In this document: positions 37,786-64,000 of the stretch, in pieces
How the letters are laid out: each line of letters begins with the position of its first letter
Position numbering within the stretch: the first letter of the stretch is position 1
Made by a program: the position numbers and the translations under genes
Notes under the pieces: generated by a model
Database searches by the model: none
Seen by the model: only the letters and a program-made list of their open reading frames with translations
Told to the model about the DNA's origin: nothing
Origin: Podarcis vaucheri
Taxonomy: Eukaryota
Assembly (NCBI GenBank): GCA_965113315.1
Contig: OZ220377.1
Strand: one strand, 5' to 3'
DNA length: 64,000 bases

Positions 37786-37923
37786 CAGCGGTTCTCAACC
37801 TGCAGGTCTCCAGATGTTGTTGGACTACAACTCCCATCATCCCTGAGCTCTGGCCTTGCTTGCTAGGGGTGATGGGAGTTGTAGTTCAACAACATCTGGG
37901 TACCCACAAGTTGAGAGAGGCTG
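37786..37923. mobile_element. hAT-type MITE (~138 bp, palindromic)
   Basis: Arms cagatgttgttggactacaactcccatca and tgatgggagttgtagttcaacaacatctg; termini CAG...CTG. Confidence 0.8.
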
Positions 37924-38299: not shown

Positions 38300-40000
38300 C
38301 GAGGTTGTATTTATCGTGCGACCTGAAACACGGCTAGGAAAACCCCGCTGCTGCGTTCCGTGGGGATTCCTGCCGCGTCGCGCTCTGGGACAAGCCCTTT
38401 CCCCCTCCGACCCTCCTCCTAGCCGGCCTTCCGACGGCCCCGCCACACCGCCCGCCCTGCAGCGCTCCTGGGCCCGAAGCCGACCCGGAAGGCAGCTGCG
38501 GGACGTCACGGCCCGCTCTCGAAGGGACTCCGTCGGGGCCGCGCTCCCCCGGAGATACGAAATAGGTAGAGGGGACCATTTTGCTGCCGGGATGGGTCAC
38601 TCCCTGGATCCAATTGAGAAACCATGTTTGAATCTTCCTCCCTCAAGTGAGAGCAGCACGTAGAAAACGGGCAGCCCGGACCGCGAAGTGCAAGCGCCCC
38701 CCCTCCCCGCAAAAGAAACACACGCACAAAACGCCTCAGGCACGTGCAGGTTTTTATTTTGCGAGAAATACGTTCATTTTACTGCGCCGGCCATCGCTGC
38801 AGCAGAGCGGAGAGTCCTCTGTGCGGAAGAGAGCCGCTTGCAACATGCTTGCAGGGTAACCTCGCGCGGATATTGCGGGTTGGGGTCAGGCCCCATAATA
38901 ATAATAATAAATTTCATTTATATCCCGCCCTCCCCAGCCGAAGTCGGGCTCAGGGCGGCTAACAACAATAAAATAATACATTATAAAATCATTTCATTAT
39001 AAAATTAATTCAAATCATGAAGAGCAGCAGGCACCAGGGTCGCAGCGACCCTCAAAACCCCATTGACTTCTCTGGCCAGCTTCCTGTTTCTACCCGGAAG
39101 TGCACCGGATGTGACACTCTATCCTTTTTGGGTAGCTCTGCGTTCGCTCCCCGTTGTTTGCATCACGTGCTCACAACGACGCGGCCTCTTGGCATCCCAG
39201 CCAATCAGGAGGCGCGCCGACCTCGTCCTCTGCCCCGATTGGCCGGAGCGGTCACAAGAGCGGAGCGAGTTCGTTCCTCCGGTCTCGCCCGCCTCTTCTT
39301 TCTCGGGCAGCCGCGATGGAGGCGGAGGAAGGACCGCGGCATCTCAGGTGAGGACGCGGAGGGGGCCTCCGGCTGCGCCTGCACATGCGCGCGGGGGACC
39401 CGTCTTGGGAAACCCCCGCTTTGGCCCACGTGCCCCCGGCGGAGTCAAGGGAGTCCCTGGGCATGTGCAGAGTGCGCCCCAGCCTTCCTGCCCCAAGGGG
39501 CGCCCCCACTCCCGCTGCTCCATCGAGGCTCTTCCGCCCCCTTGGGGTTTCCCGCGAGGAGGCAGCAACCCCTCCCGAAGGATTTCGGGGCCCCGTGACC
39601 GGCCTCCGCCCGCGGACAGGCGCTCCTTCTTACAGCAAAGCCCCCGAATGCGGCGCCGCGGCTCCGGAGCGGGAGTTATGCTAATCGCCGCGGGAAGCGC
39701 GAAAGCCGATTTCGGCTTGCAAAGCGCCGGCTGGGATTTGAGTCCTTCGTGGGCCGCTTATTCAGCAGGTGCTGCGCCTGCTGCCAAAGGGGCTCTCCTG
39801 CCCGCACTTGCCACATCCTCCGGGGGCGGTGATCAGGTGCGCCCGCGGAAAGGCAGGCAGGCGGCCGGGAACACGCCCAGGATCGGGGGCTGCCGGGCTG
39901 CCTGCCGGTGGCGCTTCTCCCTCCTCCCGCGGGACGGGGGTCTGGCGCTTAAGTCCCAGCCAGGTCTTCATAACCGCGGCCCTGCGCGGCTCATCCGCTT
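38300..40000 (+). promoter_or_regulatory. INPP5K: INPP5K CpG-island promoter region
   Basis: CpG-rich. Two ETS motifs (ccggaagt ~39094, ccggatgt ~39105), E-box cacgtg ~39164, CCAAT ~39201 and inverted CCAAT ~39238 lie upstream of the ATG at 39316. Confidence 0.85.
38896..38975 (-). mobile_element. Short L2-type 3' tail with (AAT)n inside the CpG island
   Basis: aataataataataaatttcatttatatcccgccctccccagcc...ctcagggcggctaacaac. Confidence 0.6.
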
Positions 40001-43000
40001 TCTGCCTTTGCAGCTCCTGTATTTACGGGGAACCTCCAGTAGATGTTGGGCTCTAGTTCCCAGCAAGCAGCGGAGACAGTGCTCAGGGGTGATGGGAGCT
40101 GTAGTCTGGCAGCCTTTGGAAGGCCACCTGTCTGGGCTACATCCTGTGCCTTGTGGAGGGCTGACTTGGGTGGGGAAACAGACCAAATATGTTTTCCCTT
40201 CCCCACACTACTCTGACCACAAGCTAAGCTCCAACAGCCACCTCTGAACCCCCAAACCCCTTCCTAGCCAGAAGCTGTGTTAATAAAAGCCTCCTGAGAG
40301 GGTCACTTGTCAGATTTGGTCCCTGGCTTGGCAATCCCTCCATGTGGGGCACGTGCCTCAAAACAGGTGATTATACCTCCATGACACAGTGGCAGAAACA
40401 TGTGATTGGCCTCAGTTAACAATAGCTTTTCATAAATCTCCAGGCTCCAGTAGCATTAAATCTTGGCGCGTGGCATGGGTTTGGGGGGTGCACCTTGAGG
40501 GCTTGCAAGGAGGGGAAGAGGATGTCTCTTCCTGCCTCAGAGTTGCCTTCTGGTGTGGTTGACGGCTTCCTTGCTTAGCTTGTGCCAGAAGCAAGGCTTA
40601 ATTCTGCCTACATTGACCCTTCTCTGGCTGGGGGGCGCCTTGGGTGGGGAGTGGGGCATGCCCCTCTCCTTCTGGCCCCATGGCATCTTTGCAGCCTGAA
40701 GAGCCGCTTCAGGACTTGCTCTCCGTCTCCTTGCTGGACCTGGAGGGCACCCCCTCTGCCTTGCGCAGCCGCTCGGCCAGTGTGAGCAGCACGGGCTCCA
40801 GCGGGCGGCTGCAGCTGCGGCAGCGAGTGGCACAGCTCATGGCTTGCGTGGAGGACGTCAGCTCCGATGACGAGATCCATGAGGAAGTCTCACGCACCAT
40901 TGACGAGGCTTTTCTGATCTGTGGGAAGATGCAGAAGCAGAAGCGTCTAGGGATCAGGTGCCCTTCCCAGGCAGACAGGCTCTCTCCAGCGGGGCTTTGG
41001 TGTTTTTAGGGCAGGATTACAGATAATAAGGCACGAGGAGGGGAGAGATAAATGGGGTGGCGAGGGAGCCTGTCCCCACCTGTTTGTACTTCAGCTGCAC
41101 TGCCTTTTGTCTGTCTCTGAAGGTTGCACTTGGTGACCTGGAACGTGGGCACAGCTTCTCCCCCTCCTGATGTCACCTCTTTGCTGCAGCTCAACTTGCA
41201 AGACCAGGAAATGGACATGTATGTCATTGGGTAGGTATTTTGGGAACTAGAGCTGGGGCTCTTCTTGGGGATATCATCCTGGTCATGCCATCTGCAGAAG
41301 CGAGGGGGCGGCCTTCAAGAGCATGGTGCTTCTTGAGATCTTTTGCAGAAGGTCTCTGCAGGTCTCTGGACATAGGGGGAATGTGGCACAGGTGAGAGAT
41401 CTCATTCAAGAAAAGGGGCGGCCATTCAGGATTGTGTGGACTTCAAGAAAGAACGCTCTTGGTGTGTGTGATTTCACTGAGTAGTGCTGAGTAGTCAGTA
41501 CTCAGTGTGCTAAGATGGTATCCAGAATTCTGCCACTGTGTAGTGATGCACCCTCCCTTCCTCTGCTTTCATGTGGATGCAGGCGATGGGTTAAAAGATT
41601 AACAAACATTTTATTGGACAGCAGAGGGACAGCAGCCGCTCCTGCTCTTAGTGGTTCCCAATAGGTCTGGGTACTTTTTGTCAAAATGAGATGTAAGATT
41701 ACCTGGGTTAACCCTGGACTGTTCAGTTTACAGGAGGTGAACTCCAAGATTGTGAATTTCCTATCCGACATGGCCTTTGATGATCCTTGGAGTATTTTCT
41801 TCATGAATGTTCTTTCTCCTCTGCGCTATGTCAAGGTAATCATGTTGATTTGTCTATCGGTGGTCTCTGGCTTACATTCTCCTGATGAATATTCTCTCGT
41901 GTGAGGTGTCCTGTCATTTGGCCGTGGCCCTGCCTCCTTCCTGACCAGCAGACAGTCATAGATCTGCTGCAAGTGTTCCAGATTTTGCATTCAGCATAGG
42001 GAGGCCACACTGGGGAGGCATTCTCAGTGACTGCCCGCTCCTCCCAGGGACTCGCCAAAGCAGAAACCATTCAAGGCTGGCTTTTGGAATTAAGTGTTCT
42101 AGAATTGTCTCCGATGCAAGAAGTAATGTAGTCACAGTGGCTCTGTGCTCCCTCCACTGGTCTGGAGGCAACAAGTGCCTCTGAATACGGTGAATTACAA
42201 GCGTGGAGAGTATTTCTGCTGTTTTCAGGTCCTGCTTATGGGGAGCAGGTTGGCCACTATGGGAAGCAGGGCAGGGGGCTAGAGGACCCCTTTGGCCCGA
42301 TCCAGTTGCTGAAGGACCTTCTTATGTTCTTTTGATTTCAAGAATGGTCTAGTCTGGTTTGATTCCAAAAGGCCTACCAACCACCTGGAATTGCAGTGGC
42401 TGCGCATTAAATTAAATAAGACAAGGCTACAGTTTTGATATTTCCTGTGCTTGGTCCTCAGACACTACTCCACGGCCAGAGTTCTGTTGAGCATTGCACT
42501 GGCTTTGGTCAGATGCTCCCCAGTGCCTTTATCAGGGCTGGGCAGGAAGAGATTCTTGATACTGCCTGTCTTCCATTTATCTCAAATTCCATCACGAATG
42601 GAGGAAGCAGAAGCTTTCCTTGGCCCTCAGAGGAGATGCAGTCGCCTTTCTTTAGCCAACTGAGCAGTGTTTGGACTCCCTTCCCAGGCCTGGGGTTTCC
42701 TGGGGCACCCTAACCTTTTCTGGGGGGTCGCTAGTGTTTGTTTTTAAAAATTCTCTTCTGCTCGCAGGTATCTTCCATGCGCATGCAGGGTCTCCTCCTG
42801 CTGGTCTTTGCAAAGCAGCCTCACGTCCCCTTCATACGGGACATTCAGAGCCAGTTCACTCGCACGGGTCTCTACGGATATTGGGTAAGCAGCTCACCGT
42901 GTTTTCCAGACCTTTTAATGGCTTTTTCAAAGTGCAACTTAGTCTTGGCTTCTGCATGTTGTCAGCGGTGGCTTCAGTGAGGAATAAAAGAACGTATAGA

Positions 43001-46000
43001 ATTTTACTCCTTTTAGTAAAGTTTTGAAACATTTTGTCTGAAGTTATAAACTTGTCAAGGGCTACAGAGAATAATCTGTGTGATGATGCAGGATTGGACC
43101 ACATCAGAGCAAAAAGTGCTGCCATCCCTGGTGCTAGCAAATTTGCTCCTCACTTCTGTACCCAAAGTACAGTCTGATTCCTGGCTACCTATTTAACACT
43201 CATGGTGGCTTACTTCTCTGTTGTCTTGAGGATTCCAGTCCCTTTCTTGTCTTCAAACAAGTTTGGGATTGACCAGGGCTTTTTTTAGCTGAAACTCACC
43301 AGAACTCAGTTCCGACACATCTCAGGTGGGCGCCGTTGCCATTATAAGAGAACAAAGGAGGTATTCCTGAGAAGTTCCAACACCTCTTTTTCTAGAAAAA
43401 TAGCACTGTTTGATATTTATGAATGGTAGGTGTTGCTTCTGAAATGTACCGTATTTTGCGCCCCATAGGACGCTCCGGCCCATAGGACGCACCTAGTTTT
43501 TTGGGGGGGAAATAAAGGGGAAAAAAATTATTTCCCCCCCAGGTGCGGGGCTGGAAGAACCAGGTCGGGGAACAGTGGGAAGGCACGCTCTGCCTCCCCG
43601 CTGTCCCCCGAGCTTGTGGGGCTGGCGATGGGGAGAAGTGCGCTGATCCCGGGACTGCAGGCAGCTCTGTGCGGCCATCCGGAGTGGGGCGGGACTTCGC
43701 TCCCGGTGGCCGCACAGAGCTGCGCTGATCCCAGGACTGCAGGCAGCTCTTCGCAACCCTCGGAGCCGGTCTCCCGAGGGTTGCGCAGAGCTTCCTGAAG
43801 CCCGGAGAGCGAGAGGGGTCGGTGCGCAGCGACCCCTCTCGCTCTCCAGGCTTCAGCGAAAACCTGCATTCGCCCCATAGGATGCAGGCACATTTCCCCT
43901 TCATTTTTTGAGGGGGAAAAGTGCGTCCTATAGGGCAAAAAATACGGTACCTGGAAATGGAAACAAGTTCAATGGAAACAAGTCCCAAAACCGCCTCAAG
44001 CGCTGTTGTTGTGTGATCTGGGGGACCTGATCCGTCCGTGCCTTGCCTTCTTATGTCTTGTAGGGAAACAAGGGGGGTGTCACTACTCGCATGTCTGTCT
44101 ATGGACATACCATCTGTTTCCTGAACTGCCACTTGCCAGCCCACATGGAGAATGCAGGACAGCGGCTGGATGACTTTGAGCGCATCTTGGAGATGCAGCA
44201 GTTTGAAGGCGAAAAGATTCCCAACGTCCTGGATCACGAGTGAGTGGCAACTGAATCTGGTCGAGGCTGCCCTGCTGGCTTGCTTCTAGGAAAAGAGGAT
44301 CCAGCTGGATTGGCCTCTGCTACATATGTCATTGTCCATTTAGTTTAGGGAGCCTCTCTGATAGCTTTGAACCCAAAGTGAGAGCCTCCGGAAGAGGGTT
44401 ATTTCATGAAGGCGGTGGTGGCGATTAATTTGTTGCTGTTTCCACAAAAGCAACTCAAAGTGGTTTACAAAAATGAACATTAAAAACAATCTAAACTGCT
44501 CATCAATAGAATGTGGATTCAATTCAACTTATCCTAATAAAAAGGTGAGCAGAAGGCCACATACTTGACGCTCCAAATTCCCAGGTAAATAACATTTTTT
44601 TTGCCCAACTCCTAAAAAGAGATAGCGGTTGTGGAATTTTGTAGTTTAGGGTTTATTCAGAGCTCCACAGAAGTCCGTTCAAGGGAACAAAATTCCTGGA
44701 AGAAGAGGAGGTCCTCAAGCAGAACAGCCCTTGGTCTCACTCCCAAGCTTGGAAGTCTTCCCTTTTGCTCTGAAGCACCTGGTTCTGCGAAGGGAGGGAG
44801 GTAAGGGACCAGAGAGGGAGGGCCATTTTGAGCATTGTTCTGGCAGCTCTTTTGGGAGCCACTGTAAGTAGTGAGCCTGACTCTGCCCCCCCCCTCCGCA
44901 CCTTGTCACTTTCAAGACTAAGTGATGCTTCCTAATGGGAAAAAACCATGCAGTTCAAAGCAAGCAAGAGGACAGATAACTTTGCACAGTGGTGAAAGAT
45001 AATTGAGAACTACAGAGTAAATGTGCTCCTGAGATGACATGTGCGGATGAATCTGCTATGTCTGACGTCTGCCTTGCAGCTTTCTCCTGTTTTTTCTTAG
45101 TTATTTCTCGTTTCTTCTCTGTGAAGCGTTCTCTTCTGGTTTGGTGACTTGAACTTCCGGATTGAAGATTACGGCCTGCATTTCATTCGAGAATCAATCA
45201 ATAACAGCCGATTCAGCCTTTTGTGGGAAAAGGACCAGGTACTACCTCCAAGTTCTGTTCTCTTCATCCCTGTGCAGGTGCCACCACCATGATCTTCTGC
45301 TTTCCTCTCTCTTCTGGCTTCCCCTGATGGAAGACCCTACAATTTCTCCTGCTGATTCCACCCACCCATGACTCACCCCCCAAATGTCACTTGGCAACAA
45401 ATCTGTGAATATTTACATTTTGTTCCCATACTTTTTTGCCTTATTCATGGTCCATATCTATTTCACAATTGGCTCTAAATTTCCTCCTGGGAAGTTGTGA
45501 AACTTGCCTGTCCCATTCCATATCAATTTCTGTGGAGTAAAATGACCTTCATGTGGATCTCCTTTCCGGAAGGAAGGAAGGAAGGAAAGAAAGGCCTCGA
45601 AGAGGAGGCTGCAGAACTTCTTATATGTAGGATTCTTTTAGTTGGGCCTGGTTGCTGCTTTGCGTTTCTGTTATTCCTTTCTTTTTATTTTTGCAGCTTA
45701 ACATAGCTAAGAAGAAGGAACCCATTCTTCAAGAATTCATGGAGGGGCCCCTGAAGTTCAAACCCACCTACAAGTTTGACCTGTACTCCAATGACTATGA
45801 CACCAGGTAAATGCTGGTGTCACACATCTTGGATGTATGACCAGGCTGGTGAAGGTGAATAAGCAGAAGAAAGCGGGAGGCAGTTTGGGGAAGGAGAGAG
45901 CTTCATCAGTGTCTTGGCCCAAGTCCTCCAAAAGAGCTCCAGTGGAATTGGTGTTTGGGATTTTTGCACTAATGTCTGTTTCTATTTCAGGGGGCAGAAG

Positions 46001-49000
46001 ACGCTCTTTTGGTTTAAGTAAGGAGATTTTGATGCCCTCCTTTCCAAATCTTCAGCATTTTAGACTATTAGGCTATTAGCATTTCAAACTGTTGCTGCTC
46101 TATTCTCTCCAGCTGCTGGAGGCTTGATCCTAACCTGCTAATTGGCGTGATGGACCTGAAATAAAAAAGAGCCTCTTGCATCTGGGTGCAACGGAGAGTT
46201 TCCCCCACAGTGATCAGTGGGGATGAAGGAAGCAGCTGTTCTCCAGCATGATAGCCCTTGCGAATTCAGTTTTGTTGGCTCACTAGGTTTGCTTTCTCGC
46301 CTGCCTGCTGGGGCTCCTCAGAAGTCAGGATAGGAAGTGCTTCTGCTGCACTTGCTTCCACAAGGCACAAAAGGGCTCTGTTGGCTGCTATTTAGTCAGC
46401 TCAGCAGCTTAAAACGGGGTTTGTAGGTTGCTCAGCTGCCCCTTGGGTAGCTTAATCCCTTCAAAGAGACCCCGGTGGGAAATGGAGTGAACAGGTCAGA
46501 GCTTAAGCTACTGGTAACTCCAGTGGCAATAAGAGTTTAGTGCTGCCGAGCAAACTTGTCTTCTTCCCACATCTTTCTATCGTAGAATTATAGAGTTGGG
46601 AGGGATCTGAAGGGCCATCTAGCCCACCCCCTTGCAGTGCAGGAATCCTTTGCCCAAAGTGGGGCTCAAATCCATGACCCTGAGATTAAAAGCCTCATGC
46701 TCTGAGTCCTCTGAGAATGACCAGGCAGCCCAGGCTGTATTTGTCTCCTGGGGTTATCACCATTTCACTCAGGGCCAGAAATGCAGGTGGCACAAACTTC
46801 AATGTGGGCAAACCTCTCCTGAGCACTTGATGGTCTCATGACTTACCACGTGGGCCACTGTAAATGTAGCTGATGCAACCTGGCTAACACTTGGTTGCTG
46901 CTAGTTCGTGTTGTTTTCTGATACGAAGTTGATTAACCTCCCTTCTTCTTCGTCTGCCTTTCTTTTAGATCTGCTAACGTCCAGATAGACATTGTTTGAT
47001 TGAGCTATAAAATGAAGGCGGTGGGGGGCAGTGTATGAACTGGTTTGCTTTGTCCCCATAATGCCTCTGCTGCTGCCACCATGGATAGCAGCTTTGCTTC
47101 GTTGGTGTGTCCTCACTGCCTCCCCTTTTGCAGTGGGAAGAAGCGGAAGCCTGCGTGGACGGACCGGATCCTCTGGAGGGTGAAGCACCTTTTGCAGTTG
47201 GCCTCAGAGGCAGGAGAGATGCCAGAAGAGGAGGCCATTTCTGTGTCGCTGCACAGCTACATCAGCCACATGAGTTACGGCATCAGCGACCACAAACCTG
47301 TCACCGGGACCTTTGTACTTGAGGTAATGTTCTCCTCTCCCTGAGTGCAGAATTGGCTCTTGGAAAAGGAAACCTGGCCACGACTCCGGTCCCTTCCATC
47401 AGAGAAATGGCTGGGCAGATGAAGCCCAGCTACAGAAGTCCTGGGAAGGCTTTGCAAGCTTTCCAGCTCCCCAAGGTGTATTTTCTGATGGACGCTTTGC
47501 AGTCCTGCTCTGTGTCTCAAAGACAGATCACGAACCATCTTATGGTTGGTGGAGAGAGAGCCCTTGCACCCTAAGTAGATAAACAGGATTGACTCTGCCT
47601 TTGATTTCCAGGCCCGTTTAAACTCCTCTCTTGTGTAGGTGCTTGCAAACTGTAACTGCGTCAGCCTACTGATTTGGGAAGGTCTCCTGTGAAGCTGCCG
47701 CACCCCCCAAATTTTTTTTGAGGGTCACTCTACAACCTTTTTAGGATAGCTTAAGTGGCAGCACGGGATGCGGGTGGCGCTGTGGGTTAAACCACAGAGC
47801 CTAGGACTTGCAATCAGAAGGTCGCCGGTTTGAAACCCCACGACGGGGTGAGCTCCCGTTGCTCGGTCCCTGCTCCTGCCAACCTAGCAGTTCGAAAGCA
47901 AGTCAAAGTGCAAGTAGATAAATAGGTACCGCTCCTGTGGGAAGGTAAACGGCGCTTCTGTGCACTGCTCTGGTTCGCCAGAAGCCGCTTAGTCCTGCTG
48001 GCCACATGACCTGGAAGCTGTATGCCGGCTTCCTTGGCCAATAAAGTGAGATGAGCGCTGCAACCCCAGAGTCGGCCACGACTGGACCTAATGGTCAGGG
48101 GTCCCTTTACCTTTAAGTGGCAGCACTTGAGGATTATTAACGTTTTCAGAGTTGGGCGCATGAAGAGTGGCTTTTGACTGCTGTTGAATGGGTGGCTATG
48201 GGATTCAACTTCTTTCCTTTCTTCCAGATGAAGCCTCTGCTTCCTGTCCCACTGGTCAGGCTGCATCCTGTGGGCAACTGGAATGCTGAGCAAGATGCCA
48301 CTGTCCGCTACTCCACAGCTCCTGAATTCCCAAGCAGTGCCTGGGATTGGATTGGTCTCTACAAGGTGACATTGCCACAGATGTGTACTGAGGGGGGAAG
48401 GATAGTAGCTCAACAACAGAGACATGAAGAAGAGTCCTCAGTTGAATTCCTGGCCTCTTGAACTGGGAAAGACCCCTGCCTGAAACCCTGGAGAGATGTT
48501 GCAGTGTAGACCAGGCACCCCCAACCTTCGGCCCTCCAGATGTTTTGGACTACAATTCCCATCATCCCTGACCACTGGTCCTGTTAGCTAGGGATCATGG
48601 GAGTTGTAGGCCAAAACATCTGGAGGGCCGAAGGTTGGGGGTGCCTGTTGTAGGCAGCACAGAGCCAACATACCAATGGCCTGGCTTCCATTTCCTCTGC
48701 TCCTTTGAGGGTGAGGTGTGCTGTGGTCATGAGAAAAACTGTGGCATTTTCTCCTTGTGAAGGAGAGGTTCTCCTGGTTCCTCCTGACAGTGTCAGAGAT
48801 TTCCTCCTGCCCAGAGTGCCCACAGTTCCAAGAGGATTTTTGGCATCCTGCAGCCAAGGATGACTAAAAGGAGGCAGTGGTGGGTTGTGTGAAGCCGAGG
48901 TATCAGGGTGGGAGGGCGCTGAGTGACCTGAGCAAAGGGTCTGGTTCCCTTGGGGGAAAGAACAGGCTGCAGACCCCGGCCCAGAAACAAAGGCAAGGCT

Positions 49001-50083
49001 CAGAGACAAGAGGAGGCTCGTGAGTGGCAGACCTCCTTGCGCCTGAAAATTCTCATTTTGATGGAAGCTGTCAAAAGCCAGGAGACGGATGAGAGACTTG
49101 GTCTTTGGTATGGGAATCTTTTGGATTATTCAGGCCAGTTCTTCTGTCCTTGTCTAAGCCTCTAAATACCACATGTGTTGCCATAATTTCCTTAGAGAAA
49201 AGGTTACAAACTTTGTGATAAATCATTGTGTGGCCTTGGCTTAATCTTGCTTTTGTTGTCATATTTCCTCATTTCTAAAACCTTGTATCACTCTCAGCAA
49301 TACTGAAGTGTGAAACAGTTCAGAGTTTGCAGCCCATTTCCTTAGCTAACCAGAGCAAATAGCTCTCACATATTAGACAGGTCTTCACTCCCCTGACAAC
49401 CAAGTTGTGCTCAAGGCAGCTCTTTCCCCTTGCAGGTGACCTTCAAGCATGCAAATGACTATGTGATGTACGCCTGGGTGCAAGACAACGAGATTTCCTC
49501 TGAGGAGGATGCCAAGCAGGTGAGGGGGAAGTAGCCTGAGGTTATCACTGCTGGCTGCTTCGTTCCCGATGTTTTGCTGAATGCTGACTGCCTTTGCTTT
49601 ATTTTCCCCAGGTCTATCTCAGTGCTGAGGAGCTTCCAGCGACGGGAGGAGAGTTTCTCCTGGGTTATTACAGCAACACAATGCAATCCCTGGTTGGCAT
49701 CAGTCAGCCCTTTCAGGTATGGGACTGATGGGCTGACTCAATACAAGCCAGCTTCCTAGGTTCCTAGAACCCCCAGGGAGCTCTTCCCTATGTTCCTGGA
49801 ATCACCTGGGGAAATGGTTCTCCTCTTTGGATTACCTAGGCTACCTCACAGGATTGTTGTGAGGACAAAATAGAGAGCGGAAGAGAACCATATATGCCGC
49901 CCTGAGGTCCTTAAAGGAAAGGTGGGAGAGAACTGTAATAAATAATAAGAAACAAAAACAAAGACTGATCTCTCCTTTCAGATCCAACCAAGGAGAATGT
50001 TAGCAGAGAAGGACCTGGCCTGGGACGGAGTCAGCAAGATGCAGGAGCAGCTCTGTGATGAGAAACCACCGTGTGACTTTTGA
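39316..50083 (+). CDS. INPP5K: INPP5K (SKIP) inositol polyphosphate 5-phosphatase K, 460 aa: join(39316..39347,41123..41230,41727..41835,42768..42884,44064..44239,45127..45238,45697..45806,47134..47323,48228..48365,49436..49519,49612..49716,49982..50083)
   Basis: 1383 nt, frame-consistent. 5-phosphatase motifs [49 protein letters not shown] and SDHKPV, then a C-terminal SKICH domain (WDWIGLYKV...YYSN...GISQPFQI). All introns are GT-AG. Confidence 0.96.
40680..40957 (+). CDS. INPP5K: Alternative 5' coding exon of INPP5K (92-aa N-terminal extension; long isoform 542 aa)
   Basis: ATG at 40680 opens [23 protein letters not shown]...[18 protein letters not shown](R). Phase-2 donor ag|gtgccc joins exon 41123 in frame. 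Coding-like codon usage and retained CpGs. Confidence 0.75.
42170..42330 (+). mobile_element. Old CR1-type 3' tail
   Basis: gcctctgaatac...ttggccactatgggaagcagg...ggcccgatccag...cttcttatgttctt. Confidence 0.55.
43274..43408. mobile_element. Small hAT-like MITE
   Basis: Imperfect TIRs cagggctttttt and aaaatagcactg. Confidence 0.55.
43449..43947. mobile_element. Non-autonomous Tc1/mariner-superfamily (Tc2/pogo-like) element, TA TSD
   Basis: TA|CCGTATTTTGCGCCCCATAGGACGC ... GCGTCCTATAGGGCAAAAAATACGG|TA; CpG-rich interior with an internal ~29-bp duplication. Confidence 0.9.
46582..46706 (-). mobile_element. tRNA-Lys-derived SINE with CR1 tail
   Basis: The minus strand reads cagagcatgaggcttttaatctcagggtcatggatttgagccccactttgggc (tRNA-Lys-like), fused to gattcctgcactgcaagggggtgggctagatggccc...actctataattctacg (CR1 3' end). 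Confidence 0.75.
47765..48112 (+). mobile_element. Full-length Sauria SINE with 14-bp TSD
   Basis: tRNA-like head gggatgcgggtggcgctgtgggttaaacc, Sauria core gccaacctagcagttcgaaagc, Bov-B-like 3' end and accttt tail. TSD ttaagtggcagcac at 47751-47764 and 48113-48126. Confidence 0.95.
48393..48685 (+). mobile_element. Degenerate Squam3-like tRNA-SINE interrupted by a MITE
   Basis: ggggaaggatagtagctca...gaaagacccctgcctgaaaccctggagag...gtgtagac|MITE|...ccaatggcctg; similar to the copy at 52053. Confidence 0.55.
48512..48647. mobile_element. hAT MITE, 136 bp, with 37-bp perfect TIRs
   Basis: caggcacccccaaccttcggccctccagatgttttgg and its exact reverse complement; 8-bp flanks gtgtagac and ttgtaggc match at 6/8. 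Confidence 0.92.
49830..49950 (+). mobile_element. SINE/L2-type 3' tail
   Basis: ctacctcacaggattgttgtgagg...gccgccctgaggtcctt...aataaataataa; a related copy lies at ~13830-13915. Confidence 0.55.
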
Positions 50084-60859: not shown

Positions 60860-62289
60860 TAGTTCAATGGCAGCAGTTCCACTCATGAAAAGGCTGGAGG
60901 CGGCTGCTGGCAGGACACTTGTGGCAACATTGGAAGACTTAATCTGGGAGTAGCTGGGAGAGTGCAATGTAGATCAGCCTCCCCACCCCCACATGCTGGA
61001 GCCTGTGCATTCTTTTGAGCTCCTGGCTCCCTCTCCCTGCCCCCCCCCCTTCTCTTGCGTTCTCCTCTAGCACCAGGCCATCTTCTATTCTGCCTTCCTC
61101 CTCACCCCCCACCCTGGCTGCCTTTATGGATTGGTTAAATATGAGATTAACTGGGGTAAATGTTTTCAACATGCTTGCTTCCTCAGCCTCAGTGTTCTCC
61201 ATCTATGAAACAGGCACGTTCCCTAGAATGCCTATCTTTCCTTTAGCTGATATGCTGCACTAATATGCTGCGCTGCACTGCTGTTTGTGTTATACATGTG
61301 ATCTTGTGTGCGATGTGACCTGATGTGGCGGGGTTCAGAGTAATGGGGTCTACATGCACTCTTACTTCTTGCTTCATGTGGGACCTAGGTAACATATCTG
61401 TTTTGTGGGTTGGGGGGCTGGAATTCTCTGCAAGGCTTTGAAGCAGCACAGCTTTTTTGAGTACATTAGGTCCTAAAAATAACAGAAATGTGTAACTGTT
61501 GGTGACTTCAGGGGTGGGGGGAGAAATCCTTACCAGGTCAGCAACACAGAATTTACCTCTTAGCTGAAGTGCTGCCCATAGCTCTGACATGGACCCACAG
61601 ACAGTCTTCTACTAGTCTGAATACGACACTCAAGATTCTTGGGGAATAAGAGCTGTGTAGTTTGAAGAGCCTGCCATTGTGAGCATAAATGCACTTAGAA
61701 CTTTTAAATGTCCTGTCTCCAGATGCTTCAAAACAAGAAACTTGAAATGTTTTATTACTAAAATAACCCTCTACTGCTCTATTAGCCGCCAACAACTCAC
61801 TTGGGAGCATCTGAAAACAGGCAAGACTCAAGGGAAGCCTGTCAGCTACCCTTATGTTGGAATCCTAAACTAGATTGTTAGTCCTTCCAGTGCAGTACTG
61901 TCCTTGCCCTCGCTATCCCCCATCTTTGTTAGAAATCTGCAGAGCTTCAGACAGAGTGAGCAAATAGGTGTTACAAGGTCTCCCTTACAGGCTAAGCTGC
62001 ATCCGCCCCAGCACTGGGCACAACTCTCCAGACAGGTGTCTCTTACAGTTTTGTTACCTGAGACCTTTCATTGGAGAAGTCCGAGCCTTAACCCACAACC
62101 TTTTACAAACAAAGTGTGGACTTGCCAACTGCCAGAGACTGACATGTTGTAAACTGGTCAGATTTGCAAGCAGGGCTGGGCTCAAATGAACCACAAGGCA
62201 AAGGCAAAGACTGCTGGTGGCGGGGAACTGCAAAAGGCAATTTTTGCAAGGGAGTTCACCCTTCCACTTTGCCCCTAAGTATAGTGTAT

Positions 62290-62732
62290 AGTAAAAGCTA
62301 TGGTTTTCCCAGTAGTGATGTATGGAAGTGAGAGCTGGACCATAAAGAAGGCTGATCGCTGAAGAATTGATGCTTTTGAATTGTGGTGCTGGAGGAGACT
62401 CTTGAGAGTCCCATGGACTGCAAGAAGATCAAACCTCTCCATTCTGAAGGAAATCAGCCCTGAGTGCTCCCTGGAAGGACAGATCCTGAAGCTGAGGCTC
62501 CAAGACTTTGGCCCCCTCATGAGAAGAGAAGACTCTCTGGAGAAGACCCTGATGTTGGGAAAGATGGAGGGCACAAGGAGAAGGGGACGATGGAGGAAGA
62601 GATCGTGGGACAGTGTTCTGGAAGCTACCAGCATGAGTCTGACCAAACTGCGGGAAGCAGTGGAAGACAGGAGTGCCTGGCGTGCTCTGGTCCAGGGGGT
62701 CACAAAGAGGCGGACACGACTAAACAACAACA
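62290..62732 (+). mobile_element. Bov-B (RTE) LINE 3' fragment with 9-bp TSD
   Basis: Encodes WCWRRLLRVPWTARRSNLSILKEISPECSLEGQILKLRLQ...REDSLEKTLMLGK; (CAA)n tail. TSD atagtgtat at 62281-62289 and 62733-62741. Confidence 0.95.
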
Positions 62733-62949
62733 ATAGTGTATGTGCTGTGCAACCGCAGCATATGGCTAAATTGGGGGTTCTGCATGGCAGAGGAGTCCTC
62801 TATTTTCTAGGGTTTGCTCTCCTTGCAGTGGGCACCTGGGAAGGGCTGCAGCGAACTGCAATTCTCTCCTTTTTTTTCATGTGAGCAGAGCAGATCCCAA
62901 GCTCTCTTCCTCCTCCAAGAGTTGACAAATGTTAGAACTTGTATTTAAA

Positions 62950-64000
62950 AGTCACCGCCAGCATTAAAGGCCTGGCCTTTCCGCCGCTTGCCGTGCCCCG
63001 GAGAGGCTCTCAGCGAAGAAGGACGAGGCTCCTCTGGAAAGAGCTGGCCGGCACGGACGGCGAGGAGGCCTTCGCCCGGCCTCGCTCAGCGCGGCCCACT
63101 CGGACGGGAAGCAGTGGCGGCTCTGAGGGCGGGTGTCAGGCCAGAGCGCCGCCGAGAGGCCCTCCAGCTCCACCACGGAGGGTCCCCCAGGGCCCCTCGA
63201 GCGCGACCCAGGCGGGGAAACGCCTCAGCTAGCGGGGCGGCGGAGGAAGTTCCCTCAGGGAAACCGAGACGCCGCGTCCTGAGGTGGCTTCTCGCGCGCG
63301 CGCGCCTTTCCCGCCCAAAGGGGCCCGCGGGGGCGGGGGAGGAGAGAGGGTCGCGCAGGCGCGGAGGGGCGTGGCCAGGCCGCTCTCCTGCCCTCCCGCC
63401 CCCCCCCCGGAGGGCCCGAGTCAGGCCGGCCCGCCAGCCCCGCCGCCGCGCAGGCGCACTCCGCCCTTGCCACGGCTCCGCCCGGCCCGTGACGGGAGCC
63501 CCAATTGCCGCCGCCGCCGCCGCCGATCCGACCGAGCGGCTGGAGCGAGTGTCGCCGACGGGGCAGGAGGAGGGCGCGGCGGAGCGGAGCGGGAGGGCCA
63601 GGCGGCGGCAGCAGCTCACTCAGCAAGGTAGGGCAGGAGGGAGCGGCGAGGCGGAGGACGGACCTCTGAGCATGGGCAGAGCGCTGGACTGGGTCTCCCC
63701 TGGGGGCGAAGGCAGCCCGGCGGAGCTGCGGGACCTTCGCGCGCGGCGGCGGCGGCGACCCCCGAGGGGCTGAGGGGGCGGGGCTCCTCTCCCCCCTCCG
63801 CAGCCCCGCCTCTCCGACCCTGAGGAGCTAGCTCTCCGCGTGCAGAGGAGGAGTCGCGTGTCCACGTGTCCCGTGTGAATGCGGCCCCTCCCCGGTGGGC
63901 TCCCCGCGGCGAGGCTGGGCCGGTGTCCCGGGGGGCGACGGGTCTCGCTTTCTCCCGAGGAGGCCCCTCCGCTCTGGCTCTGCCGCCAACAACTTCGCTT
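62950..64000 (+). promoter_or_regulatory. MYO1C: CpG-island promoter, probably MYO1C, with a non-coding first exon ending at 63627
   Basis: Extreme CpG density and GC boxes; ATG-free GC-rich leader ending cagcaag|gtaggg. Gene identity is inferred from synteny and the upstream PTGE exon. Confidence 0.7.

What the first reader, a model, noticed from the sequence alone, without database searches (positions are those of the whole stretch)
40680..40957. INPP5K alternative exon adds a 92-aa N-terminus with a clathrin box and an Akt-type site
Seen in sequence: intron 1 contains a 278-nt ATG-initiated open exon whose phase-2 donor splices in frame to the first catalytic exon. It encodes DLL plus LLDLE (40731-40745), RSRSAS (40764-40781), a helix-like [16 protein letters not shown] and an acidic [12 protein letters not shown] tract. 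Established: LLDLE fits the clathrin-box consensus L-phi-x-phi-[DE], and the related 5-phosphatase OCRL uses clathrin boxes to reach coated pits. RxRxxS is the Akt consensus, and SKIP antagonises PI3K-Akt signalling. Human SKIP as I recall it has only a short N-terminus. Inference: this may be a clathrin-targeted, Akt-feedback-regulated SKIP isoform of non-mammalian vertebrates. It is the best novelty candidate in the window.
Basis: partly seen in the sequence, partly recalled or inferred. Interest (0 to 1): 0.78.

Follow-up and report, generated by a model that had tools for sequence, protein, structure and literature searches.

The report
Known alternative first exon of INPP5K
This is a real and very old alternative first coding exon of the lipid-phosphatase gene INPP5K, already annotated in fishes, frogs, turtles, birds and other lizards, so the exon is ordinary even though nobody has studied what its extra protein piece does.

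Summary
Window 40680-40957 (+) is an ATG-started 278-nt open exon with a GT donor. It joins in frame to the first catalytic exon of INPP5K at 41123, and LLDLE and RSRSAS sit at the stated coordinates.

It is not new. The peptide matches the N-termini of RefSeq "INPP5K isoform X.." proteins of ray-finned fishes, frogs, turtles, many birds and the lizards Elgaria (85% identical), Pogona and Anolis. No mammal appeared in any row I could see. A 2023 zebrafish paper mentions this "alternative exon 1 ... not found in humans" and did not study it.

R-x-R-S-x-S is present in 187 of 194 sequences, and its last Ser is invariant. A clathrin-box match occurs in only 8 of 194, limited to some squamates and sea turtles. 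AlphaFold2 gives about 40 disordered residues, then a confident helix-loop-helix.

In RNA-seq of a sister species the dominant joint is the short exon (39311-39347) to 41123. No 40957-to-41123 joint was listed, and coverage of the long exon is faint.

Verdict: a conserved minor or tissue-restricted isoform. The Akt-type motif is supported as a conserved motif only. Clathrin targeting is not supported.

The parts
39311..39347 (+). Short coding exon ('1a') in the CpG island. ATG at 39316, encoding [10 protein letters not shown] plus AG (phase-2 donor). It gives the short, mammal-like N-terminus.
   Evidence: Sequence: acceptor ...ctcgggcag|, donor CTCAG|gtgagg. The joint to 41123 was seen in 10 reads (X19), 12 reads (X20) and a contig of depth 37.6 (X5). 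CpG o/e is 0.9 at 38-40 kb.
40680..40957 (+). Alternative first coding exon ('1b'): 92 codons plus AG with a phase-2 donor. It is the orthologue of the N-terminal exon of annotated long INPP5K isoforms.
   Evidence: sequence; 37 hits, best E = 2e-31. RefSeq INPP5K isoforms of birds, turtles, lizards, frogs and fishes; 85% identity to Elgaria P0125. P0125 maps collinearly onto 40680-50080.
40731..40745 (+). LLDLE. It fits the clathrin-box pattern L-phi-x-phi-[DE] and lies in a predicted disordered stretch. It is not conserved outside some squamates and sea turtles.
   Evidence: coordinates; 8 of 194 sequences fit; pLDDT below 50; 4.1% of shuffles give a match.
40764..40781 (+). RSRSAS, the basophilic R-x-R-S-x-S motif. 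Ser34 (40779-81) is invariant; R29, R31 and S32 are conserved in at least 90% of sequences.
40800..40859 (+). Predicted helix 1 (residues 41-60, ...[17 protein letters not shown]). L46, L53, C56 and D59 are invariant.
   Evidence: (block pLDDT 84-92).
40860..40874 (+). Acidic loop SSDDE. S-x-x-[DE] is the CK2-type pattern, which I recall rather than tested.
   Evidence: SSDDE in 145 sequences, with SSDDD, SSDEE or SSGDE in 33 more; loop between the two helices.
40869..40949 (+). Predicted helix 2 (residues 64-90, [20 protein letters not shown]...). F78 is invariant and E68-A77 are conserved in at least 90% of sequences.
41123..41230 (+). First catalytic exon (LHLVTWNVG...), the shared acceptor for both first coding exons.
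   Evidence: joints; PF22669.
41727..50080 (+). The remaining INPP5K coding exons (5-phosphatase and SKICH parts).
   Evidence: joints 41230>41727, 41835>42768 and 42884>44064; tblastn of Elgaria P0125 gives 80-92% identity in the catalytic exons.

Best explanation
What it is. Window 40680-40957 is the alternative first coding exon of INPP5K (SKIP). It is orthologous to the exon that starts the annotated long INPP5K isoforms of ray-finned fishes (both teleost paralogues), frogs, turtles, birds and other lizards. Spliced at 40957|41123, it replaces the 10-residue N-terminus of the short isoform with 92 residues.

What sequence and prediction show. The added part has two pieces:
1. About 40 disordered residues carrying a nearly universal R-x-R-S-x-S motif with an invariant last Ser.
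2. A confidently predicted helix-loop-helix (residues 41-90). Its loop is the conserved acidic SSDDE, and its end abuts the first strand of the phosphatase domain.

How it probably works (inferred, roughly 35% confidence). The module is a regulatory or docking unit. A basophilic Ser/Thr kinase (AGC or CaMK type; Akt is one candidate among several) phosphorylates Ser34. CK2-type phosphorylation may charge the loop. Together these would change partner binding, localisation or activity of the phosphatase.

LLDLE. This is a lineage-restricted match to a weak pattern, not a defining part of the module.

Expression. In this lizard group the long isoform is at most minor in the RNA samples examined. 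The short exon-1a isoform dominates.
For: - Exon anatomy and frame.
- Exhaustive HMMER search of 1.84 billion representatives: 37 hits at E <= 0.001, 19 at E <= 1e-10. These include full-length Alosa INPP5K isoform X1 (XP_041948639.1) and a Bambusicola model already spliced ...EFR|LHLVTWNVG.
- Profile search: 278 hits. The 120 listed are INPP5K isoforms of birds, turtles, Elgaria, a frog and fishes.
- Search with Elgaria residues 1-92: 72 of 277 candidates hit, all listed. By row: 57 bird, 7 squamate, 3 turtle, 5 amphibian.
- All of these proteins continue ...FR|LH.VTWNV, the same junction as in the window.
- The window peptide is 85% identical to Elgaria, against 80-92% for the catalytic exons.
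- Invariant S34, L46, L53, C56, D59 and F78 in 150 sequences.
- RxR[ST]x[ST] in 187 of 194 sequences.
- Of 5 listed differences between the window and the sister species within the exon, 4 are synonymous and 1 is R89L. The probability of 4 or more being synonymous is 0.014 to 0.059 under neutrality.
- AF2 of the window peptide: H41-60 and H64-90, with block pLDDT 84-93 for residues 41-80, and residues 1-34 mostly below 50. The same pattern appears in full-length Elgaria.
- PMC10239392 (passages read): zebrafish inpp5ka and inpp5kb have predicted transcripts with an alternative exon 1 adding 63 and 48 aa, 'not found in humans'.
Against: - No 40957>41123 joint was listed in 2 raw RNA-seq runs (about 12% of each read) or in 2 contig sets.
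- Depth on the exon is about 1.1 in X19 (2 reads), which matches intron background there. It is 0 in X20.
- In X5 there are two small contigs of depth 3-3.5 against 37.6 for the main transcript. One of them (40799-40987) runs 30 nt past the donor, so it is unspliced there.
- The RNA comes from a sister species (organism A), not from the window's own organism.
- The 5' end or promoter of the long transcript was not found.
- Ser34 phosphorylation, the kinase and any partner are untested.
- There is no Pro at +2, so the motif is not a canonical mode-1 14-3-3 site (the 14-3-3 consensus is recalled).
- No Pfam, PDB, fold or ESM Atlas relative gives a functional clue.
Confidence: 0.85

Rival explanations
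1. The long isoform is clathrin-targeted through LLDLE, as OCRL is through LIDLE and LIDIA. It is also feedback-regulated by Akt at RSRSAS.
For: - LLDLE fits L-phi-x-phi-[DE] and lies in a predicted disordered segment.
- OCRL1 binds clathrin through LIDIA and LIDLE on flexible loops (PMC3313792, passages read).
- R-x-R-x-x-S is conserved, and 127 of 186 sequences have a hydrophobic residue at +1.
Against: - The clathrin-box pattern is present in only 8 of 194 sequences: the window, Elgaria, Pogona (LLDVE), two unnamed Logan ORFs and three sea-turtle proteins (LFDLE).
- Birds, Anolis, most frogs and all fishes lack it.
- The pattern arises in 4.1% of shuffles of residues 1-43. It also occurs 98 times in the folded parts of 149 INPP5K proteins.
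- RxRxxS is shared by many basophilic kinases (established knowledge). Nothing here singles out Akt.
Confidence: 0.08
2. The exon is an unused relic in this lizard lineage. The short exon-1a isoform has taken over, as in mammals, and the ORF simply has not yet decayed.
For: - Only the 39347>41123 joint is seen: 10 and 12 reads, plus a contig of depth 37.6.
- The long exon has background-level or no coverage in the two raw runs.
- One contig reads through the donor.
Against: - The ORF, ATG and GT donor are intact.
- 85% identity to Elgaria equals that of the catalytic exons.
- All six invariant residues are kept. The motif residues conserved in at least 90% of sequences are also kept, except L74, which is Ile here.
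- 4 of 5 listed differences from the sister species are synonymous.
- In X5 the exon is the only unique part of that intron with any contig coverage.
- The tissues of the runs are unknown, so a tissue-restricted promoter remains possible.
Confidence: 0.06
3. It is a chance ORF in intron 1 with a fortuitous in-frame donor.
For: ORFs of this length are common in this GC-rich window. The two motifs each arise by chance at about 4%.
Against: Homology at E = 2e-31 down to 1e-12 to proteins from fishes to lizards, with the same exon junction.
Confidence: 0.01

Closest known systems
Annotated long isoforms of INPP5K in non-mammalian vertebrates. Examples: Elgaria multicarinata webbii isoform X2 (P0125), Pogona vitticeps X2, Anolis carolinensis X3, Chelonia mydas X1/X2, Parus major X1/X3, Xenopus laevis X2, Danio rerio X2, Alosa sapidissima X1 (XP_041948639.1).
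   Same: - Same gene and same position before the LH.VTWNV exon, with the same phase-2 junction.
- 85% identity to Elgaria, 66-75% to the bird and turtle proteins, and 41-60% to the fish and frog proteins, over the exon.
- Same R-x-R-S-x-S, C-V-E-D-x-SSDDE and EEVSRT(L/I)DEAF blocks.
   Different: The first 27 residues vary between clades. The window's tail ([11 protein letters not shown]) differs from the Elgaria tail (KKLKEKLQEIR). No protein of the window's own organism with this N-terminus was flagged in the searches, so it may not be annotated there.
Zebrafish inpp5ka and inpp5kb 'alternative exon 1' transcripts (XM_009291785.3, XM_021479345.1), as described in PMC10239392.
   Same: An alternative first exon adding an N-terminal extension, which the authors say is absent from human transcripts. 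The Danio protein P0057 carries the same core.
   Different: The fish extensions are shorter: 48 and 63 aa per the paper. They have RVRSDS or RMRSDS rather than RSRSAS, and no LLDLE-like segment. The paper did not test the isoform.
OCRL1 clathrin boxes (LIDIA and LIDLE).
   Same: A 5-phosphatase with a short L-phi-x-phi-[DE] peptide on a flexible segment (PMC3313792).
   Different: The OCRL boxes are conserved from zebrafish to human and are needed for function. The INPP5K LLDLE is confined to some squamates and sea turtles, and its binding is untested.
Mammalian SKIP/INPP5K short isoform.
   Same: The window also encodes a short N-terminus ([19 protein letters not shown]) from exon 1a. This is the dominant form in the RNA examined.
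   Different: No mammalian protein carrying the long module appeared in the rows seen. The paper says it is not found in humans. I did not search mammalian genomes.

Membership tests
INPP5K long-isoform first coding exon (orthologous exon) | Lies in the INPP5K gene, on the same strand, upstream of the first catalytic exon. | tested here: met
   Elgaria INPP5K maps collinearly onto 40680-50080. PF22669; joints of the downstream exons.
INPP5K long-isoform first coding exon (orthologous exon) | Sequence homology to the N-termini of annotated long isoforms. | tested here: met
   (best E = 2e-31), and (85% to Elgaria; six invariant residues kept).
INPP5K long-isoform first coding exon (orthologous exon) | Phase-2 GT donor that joins ...R|LH.VTWNV in frame. 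| tested here: met
   for the window. Searches show the same junction in the annotated proteins.
INPP5K long-isoform first coding exon (orthologous exon) | Spliced transcript present in this organism. | tested here: inconclusive
   no 40957>41123 joint listed in 4 runs of a sister species. Coverage is faint (X5 depth 3-3.5, X19 2 reads, X20 none). The tissues are unknown.
Clathrin-box ligand motif (L-phi-x-phi-[DE]) | Matches the pattern. | tested here: met
   LLDLE at 40731-45.
Clathrin-box ligand motif (L-phi-x-phi-[DE]) | Lies in an accessible, disordered region. | tested here: met
   AF2 pLDDT is below 50 over residues 9-24. This is a prediction only.
Clathrin-box ligand motif (L-phi-x-phi-[DE]) | Conserved among orthologues. 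| tested here: not met
   8 of 194 sequences. Birds have LNDLE, LSDLE or LHDLE. Anolis and the fishes have none.
Clathrin-box ligand motif (L-phi-x-phi-[DE]) | Binds the clathrin heavy-chain terminal domain. | not testable with these tools
   Needs a pull-down or ITC experiment.
Basophilic (Akt/AGC-type) phosphorylation site R-x-R-x-x-[S/T] | Matches the pattern. | tested here: met
   RSRSAS at 40764-81.
Basophilic (Akt/AGC-type) phosphorylation site R-x-R-x-x-[S/T] | Conserved among orthologues. | tested here: met
   187 of 194 sequences. The acceptor Ser is invariant in 149 and 150 aligned sequences.
Basophilic (Akt/AGC-type) phosphorylation site R-x-R-x-x-[S/T] | Bulky hydrophobic residue at +1 (the Akt preference, which I recall). 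| tested here: inconclusive
   F, M, L, V or I at +1 in 127 of 186 sequences. T, S, N, A, Q or G in the other 59. The window has Val.
Basophilic (Akt/AGC-type) phosphorylation site R-x-R-x-x-[S/T] | Actually phosphorylated, and by Akt. | not testable with these tools
   Needs phosphoproteomics and kinase assays.

The most novel reading that the evidence does not exclude
The ancestral bony-vertebrate INPP5K carried an N-terminal regulatory module that mammals have lost. The module has two parts: a disordered arm with an invariant basophilic phospho-serine, and an acidic helix-loop-helix packed next to the catalytic domain.

Phosphorylation of that serine by an insulin- or growth-factor-driven or cAMP/Ca2+-driven basophilic kinase would switch the localisation or activity of the 5-phosphatase. 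That would be a direct kinase-to-phosphoinositide-phosphatase feedback that work on mammalian SKIP could never have seen.

Squamates and sea turtles may have added a clathrin-box-like peptide on top of this module.
Probability: 0.3. Interest if true: 0.55.

Novelty: already known. Interest (0 to 1): 0.22.

Why it matters
INPP5K mutations cause congenital muscular dystrophy with cataracts, and the disease is modelled in zebrafish (listing; PMC10239392). Nearly all functional knowledge comes from the short mammalian protein.

The long isoform carries a module as conserved as the catalytic domain across about 149 fish, frog, turtle, lizard and bird proteins. It starts all the isoforms that my searches returned for many birds and turtles. 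Yet the papers I could search hold only one passing sentence on it.

For this scan the practical result is negative: the exon is an orthologue of an annotated exon, not a discovery. For the field, the invariant Ser and the helix-loop-helix are cheap, well-defined targets for a first functional test. Knock-down or knock-out designs in fish, frog and chick should also check which first exon they hit.

Tried and rejected
- Chance ORF: rejected by homology.
- Pfam on the exon peptide: 0 families at E <= 1.
- ESM Atlas: no usable hit.
- PDB sequence profile: the best hit is RPRD1B at E = 0.058, which is not significant.
- Foldseek against the PDB with the 92-aa model: 4 matches at E <= 10 and none at E <= 0.001. 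A helix hairpin is too simple for this to be informative.
- A cassette-exon model, with exon 1a spliced into 1b. The strong-looking acceptor tttgcag| at 40688-94 would remove the ATG and shift the frame. An in-frame AG at 40650-51 has no pyrimidine tract. No such joint was listed. I therefore prefer an alternative first exon, as the zebrafish paper also calls it. Its transcription start was not found.
- Bacterial-type promoter and terminator scan of 40000-40700: 0 sites. The tool is irrelevant to a vertebrate gene and should not have been used.
I counted the 5 listed differences from the sister species instead. says 18 further differences on the 5.5-kb stretch were not shown, so the count may be incomplete.
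- X1-X4 were listed as holding 0.67 of the exon's words. When laid, however, X1 showed no depth on any INPP5K exon and only low-depth intron pieces. It looks like sparse DNA, and I draw nothing from it.
- Mammals: I made no search of mammalian or human DNA. Absence rests on the rows seen (120 of 278 listed), and on the paper's sentence.
They may hold transcript or alignment details.
Full report
**1. What is in the sequence**

The stretch 40680-40957 on the + strand starts with ATG. It runs for 92 codons plus two bases (AG) and is followed by GT at 40958-59. The next exon starts at 41123 behind a good pyrimidine tract and AG. The split codon reads AGG (Arg), and the frame continues as [23 protein letters not shown]... 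This matches the start of the Pfam 5-phosphatase domain PF22669 (E = 0.029 for this short exon, 1.5e-9 for exon 44064-44240).

By itself it is not beyond chance:
- The window is 53% G+C and has many open frames of 100 codons or more.
- An in-frame donor has a one-in-three chance.
- Each of the two motifs appears in about 4% of shuffles of residues 1-43.

**2. The gene and the other first exon**

The Elgaria multicarinata INPP5K protein (P0125, 540 aa) maps collinearly onto the window from 40680 to 50080 in 11 tblastn pieces. The catalytic exons are 80-92% identical. Earlier notes of this scan place MYO1C and YWHAE just beyond the window's end. I did not check those notes, but the order fits the INPP5K neighbourhood as I recall it from human.

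A CpG island lies at 38-40 kb. In it is a 37-nt exon (39311-39347) with ATG at 39316, encoding [10 protein letters not shown] plus AG, with a strong donor. So the gene has two alternative first coding exons, both with phase-2 donors onto 41123. One gives a short, mammal-like N-terminus. The other gives the 92-residue one.

**3. RNA evidence**

The exon was used to find runs. The best DNA holders (share 1.00) are of organism D, presumably the source of the window. All RNA runs offered are of organism A, a close relative: most laid reads are 95-99% alike.

I laid 38900-44400 (5,501 letters) on two raw RNA-seq runs (X19 and X20, about 12% of each read) and two contig sets (X1, X5).

| Feature | X19 | X20 | X5 |
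|---|---|---|---|
| Joint 39347>41123 | 10 reads | 12 reads | contig, depth 37.6 |
| Depth on the long exon | about 1.1 (2 reads) | 0 | two small contigs, depth 3.5 and 3.0 |

The downstream joints 41230>41727, 41835>42768 and 42884>44064 are equally clear. No joint 40957>41123 was listed; the threshold is 3 reads or a contig.

In X19, the depth on the long exon is no more than elsewhere in that intron (0.55-0.71 in two other bins).

In X5, the two small contigs cover 40665-40821 and 40799-40987. The second runs 30 nt past the donor. In X5 this is nevertheless the only unique part of that intron with any coverage.

X1 covers only intron pieces at depth 3-4 and looks like sparse DNA, despite its word share of 0.67. 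I cannot explain that mismatch and draw nothing from it.

Conclusion: the short isoform dominates in these samples, whose tissues are unknown. The long isoform is not shown to be spliced here.

**4. Homology decides that the exon is real**

An exhaustive HMMER search of the 92-aa peptide against 1.84 billion representatives gave 37 hits at E <= 0.001, 19 at E <= 1e-10, and a best hit of 2.2e-31. Most are short ORFs called on unnamed contigs. Three are named:
- P0012 is 'inositol polyphosphate 5-phosphatase K isoform X1' of Alosa sapidissima (XP_041948639.1).
- P0004 is a Silurus model.
- P0030 is a Bambusicola (partridge) model in which the exon is already joined to LHLVTWNVG.

Three word-index searches then gave names:

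| Query | Hits | Composition |
|---|---|---|
| Alosa N-terminus | 71 of 148 candidates | all ray-finned fishes, including Danio, Amia, Polyodon, Acipenser |
| Profile of the N-terminal exon, with a full-length protein as first row | 278 of 8,000 scored, 120 listed | INPP5K isoforms of many birds, the turtles Chelonia and Natator, the lizard Elgaria, the frog Eleutherodactylus, and fishes |
| Elgaria residues 1-92 | 72 of 277 candidates, all listed | 57 bird, 7 squamate (Elgaria, Pogona, Anolis sagrei x4, A. carolinensis), 3 turtle and 5 amphibian rows (Ascaphus, Xenopus laevis, Ranitomeya, Engystomops x2) |

No mammal is in any row I could see. 158 hits were not listed. The window's peptide is 85% identical to Elgaria's. 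All full-length proteins show the same junction ...(F/I)R|LH.VTWNV.

**5. It is in print**

[quoted passage not shown] It also says the study used the human-like isoforms.

Three searches found no other paper that treats this exon:
- INPP5K, N-terminal, isoform, zebrafish.
- INPP5K, SKIP, alternative first exon, alternative exon 1, N-terminal extension.
- inpp5ka, inpp5kb. 16 papers hold a term. I saw only the listing for all but the one above.

Subscription journals and supplements are outside what I could see.

**6. Which parts are conserved**

I took the census over 194 sequences: 193 stored proteins plus the window. These are the sequences that have the C-[VILM]-[EDG]-D core and at least 25 residues before it. 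I dropped 13 stored proteins that lacked the core or were N-terminally cut.
- R-x-R-[ST]-x-[ST] is present in 187 of 194. The 7 exceptions keep RSDS- or SDS-like remnants.
- L-phi-x-phi-[DE] is present in 8 of 194: the window, Elgaria, two unnamed ORFs (all LLDLE), Pogona (LLDVE) and three sea-turtle proteins (LFDLE).
- Birds have LNDLE, LSDLE, LHDLE and the like, with a polar residue where the pattern needs a hydrophobic one. Anolis has a proline-rich stretch instead. Most frogs and the fishes have nothing similar.

In alignments of 149 and 150 sequences (window numbering):
- Invariant: S34 (the acceptor of RxRxxS), L46, L53, C56, D59 and F78.
- Conserved in at least 90%: R29, R31, S32, S37, S40, R47, R49, Q52, E58, S61-E65, E68-A77 and G82.

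The loop after the core is SSDDE in 145 sequences and SSDDD, SSDEE or SSGDE in 33 more. The teleost Ka-type group has D-P-x-x-E instead. At +1 of the acceptor Ser, 127 of 186 sequences have F, M, L, V or I. At +2, none has Pro.

Within the exon, the sister species differs from the window at 5 listed places. Four are synonymous third-position changes and one is R89L, which restores the Leu of Elgaria. With a synonymous fraction of 0.24 (all changes) or 0.36 (transitions), 4 or more of 5 has probability 0.014 or 0.059. This is a small sample, and one search did not show 18 further differences on the whole stretch.

**7. Shape**

AlphaFold2 on the window's peptide with 150 aligned sequences gives pLDDT below 50 for most of residues 1-34. 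It gives two helices, 41-60 and 64-90, with block means of 84-93 for residues 41-80.

Full-length Elgaria with 149 sequences gives the same picture at lower confidence. Residues 1-42 are below 50. The helices are 40-59 and 63-83 (blocks 58-74), and they run straight into the first strand of the phosphatase domain at 89-99. The mean pLDDT is 67.9, so I draw nothing from domain packing.

Both short motifs thus lie in a predicted disordered arm, which is where linear motifs work.

Nothing related was found in Pfam, PDB sequences (best E = 0.058), PDB folds (best E = 4.2) or the ESM Atlas.

**8. How it most likely works**

Shown:
- The exon is an orthologue of the first coding exon of annotated long INPP5K isoforms.
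- It is intact here and has been kept under constraint.
- Its conserved content is a basophilic Ser motif plus an acidic helix-loop-helix.

Inferred:
- It has its own upstream start (an alternative promoter), because the ATG is contiguous with the exon in genomic ORFs of many species and no joint from exon 1a was seen.
- The module is regulatory. The invariant Ser is probably a phospho-acceptor for a basophilic kinase. RxRxxS fits Akt, SGK, RSK and S6K, and RxxS fits PKA and CaMKII (established consensus knowledge, recalled). SSDDE fits CK2 (recalled).
- I put about 35% on a phospho-switch that changes binding, place or activity, about 10-15% on Akt being the kinase, and about 10% on LLDLE binding clathrin in lizards and turtles.

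**9. Comparison and verdict**

RefSeq annotates it from herring to great tit and in at least four other lizards, and one paper mentions it.

The clathrin-box reading fails the conservation test. OCRL's LIDIA and LIDLE, by contrast, are conserved and functionally required (PMC3313792, passages read).

I file it as already known and of low interest for the scan. The side note is that the module's function is an open, cheaply testable question.

Noticed in passing
window 45991-46017 (+): A 27-nt alternative micro-exon (ttctatttcag|GGGGCAGAAGACGCTCTTTTGGTTTAA|gtaagg) lies between the exons ending at 45806 and starting near 47129. It encodes RGQKTLFWF(N). This is identical to the 9-aa insert that distinguishes Chelonia INPP5K isoform X1 from X2, and similar to the inserts in Falco, Bubo, Anolis sagrei and Siniperca. 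[quoted passage not shown] No read data were laid on it.
   Followed up: partly
window 39309-39312: The main INPP5K contig of run X5 stops matching the window just behind a strong acceptor (ctcgggcag|). It continues upstream with 30 letters that occur nowhere in the window, even allowing 3 mismatches. Possible causes: an upstream non-coding exon outside the window, one that differs in the sister species, or a chimeric contig. The CCAAT-like boxes at 39200-39245 suggest a start site close by.
   Followed up: partly
window 38900-39083 and 43316-44051: These stretches have very high summed contig depth (hundreds to thousands) on both strands in all runs, with many loose ends. They behave as dispersed repeats, probably SINE or other transposon copies, not as part of the INPP5K transcript.
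   Followed up: no
window 37800-37900 and 40025-40115: Inverted-repeat, SINE-like elements (…gatgttgttggactacaactcccatcatccc… and its reverse complement a few bases on). These are typical of lizard genomes as I recall. One copy sits in the intron about 570 nt upstream of the long exon.
   Followed up: no
window 40658-40699: A 13-codon out-of-frame upstream ORF (ATG at 40658) overlaps the ATG of the long exon. It would matter only if the transcript starts upstream of it. The one contig that reaches this side begins at 40665.
   Followed up: no
runs X1-X4 versus window 40680-40957: The run index reports that X1-X4 hold 0.67 of the exon's sampled words. When laid, however, X1 shows zero depth on the exon and on every other INPP5K exon. 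Unexplained.
   Followed up: no
window 62001-64000: A second CpG-rich block (G+C 0.63, CpG o/e 0.71) lies at the end of the window. It may be a promoter of the next gene; this scan's earlier notes place MYO1C there.
   Followed up: no
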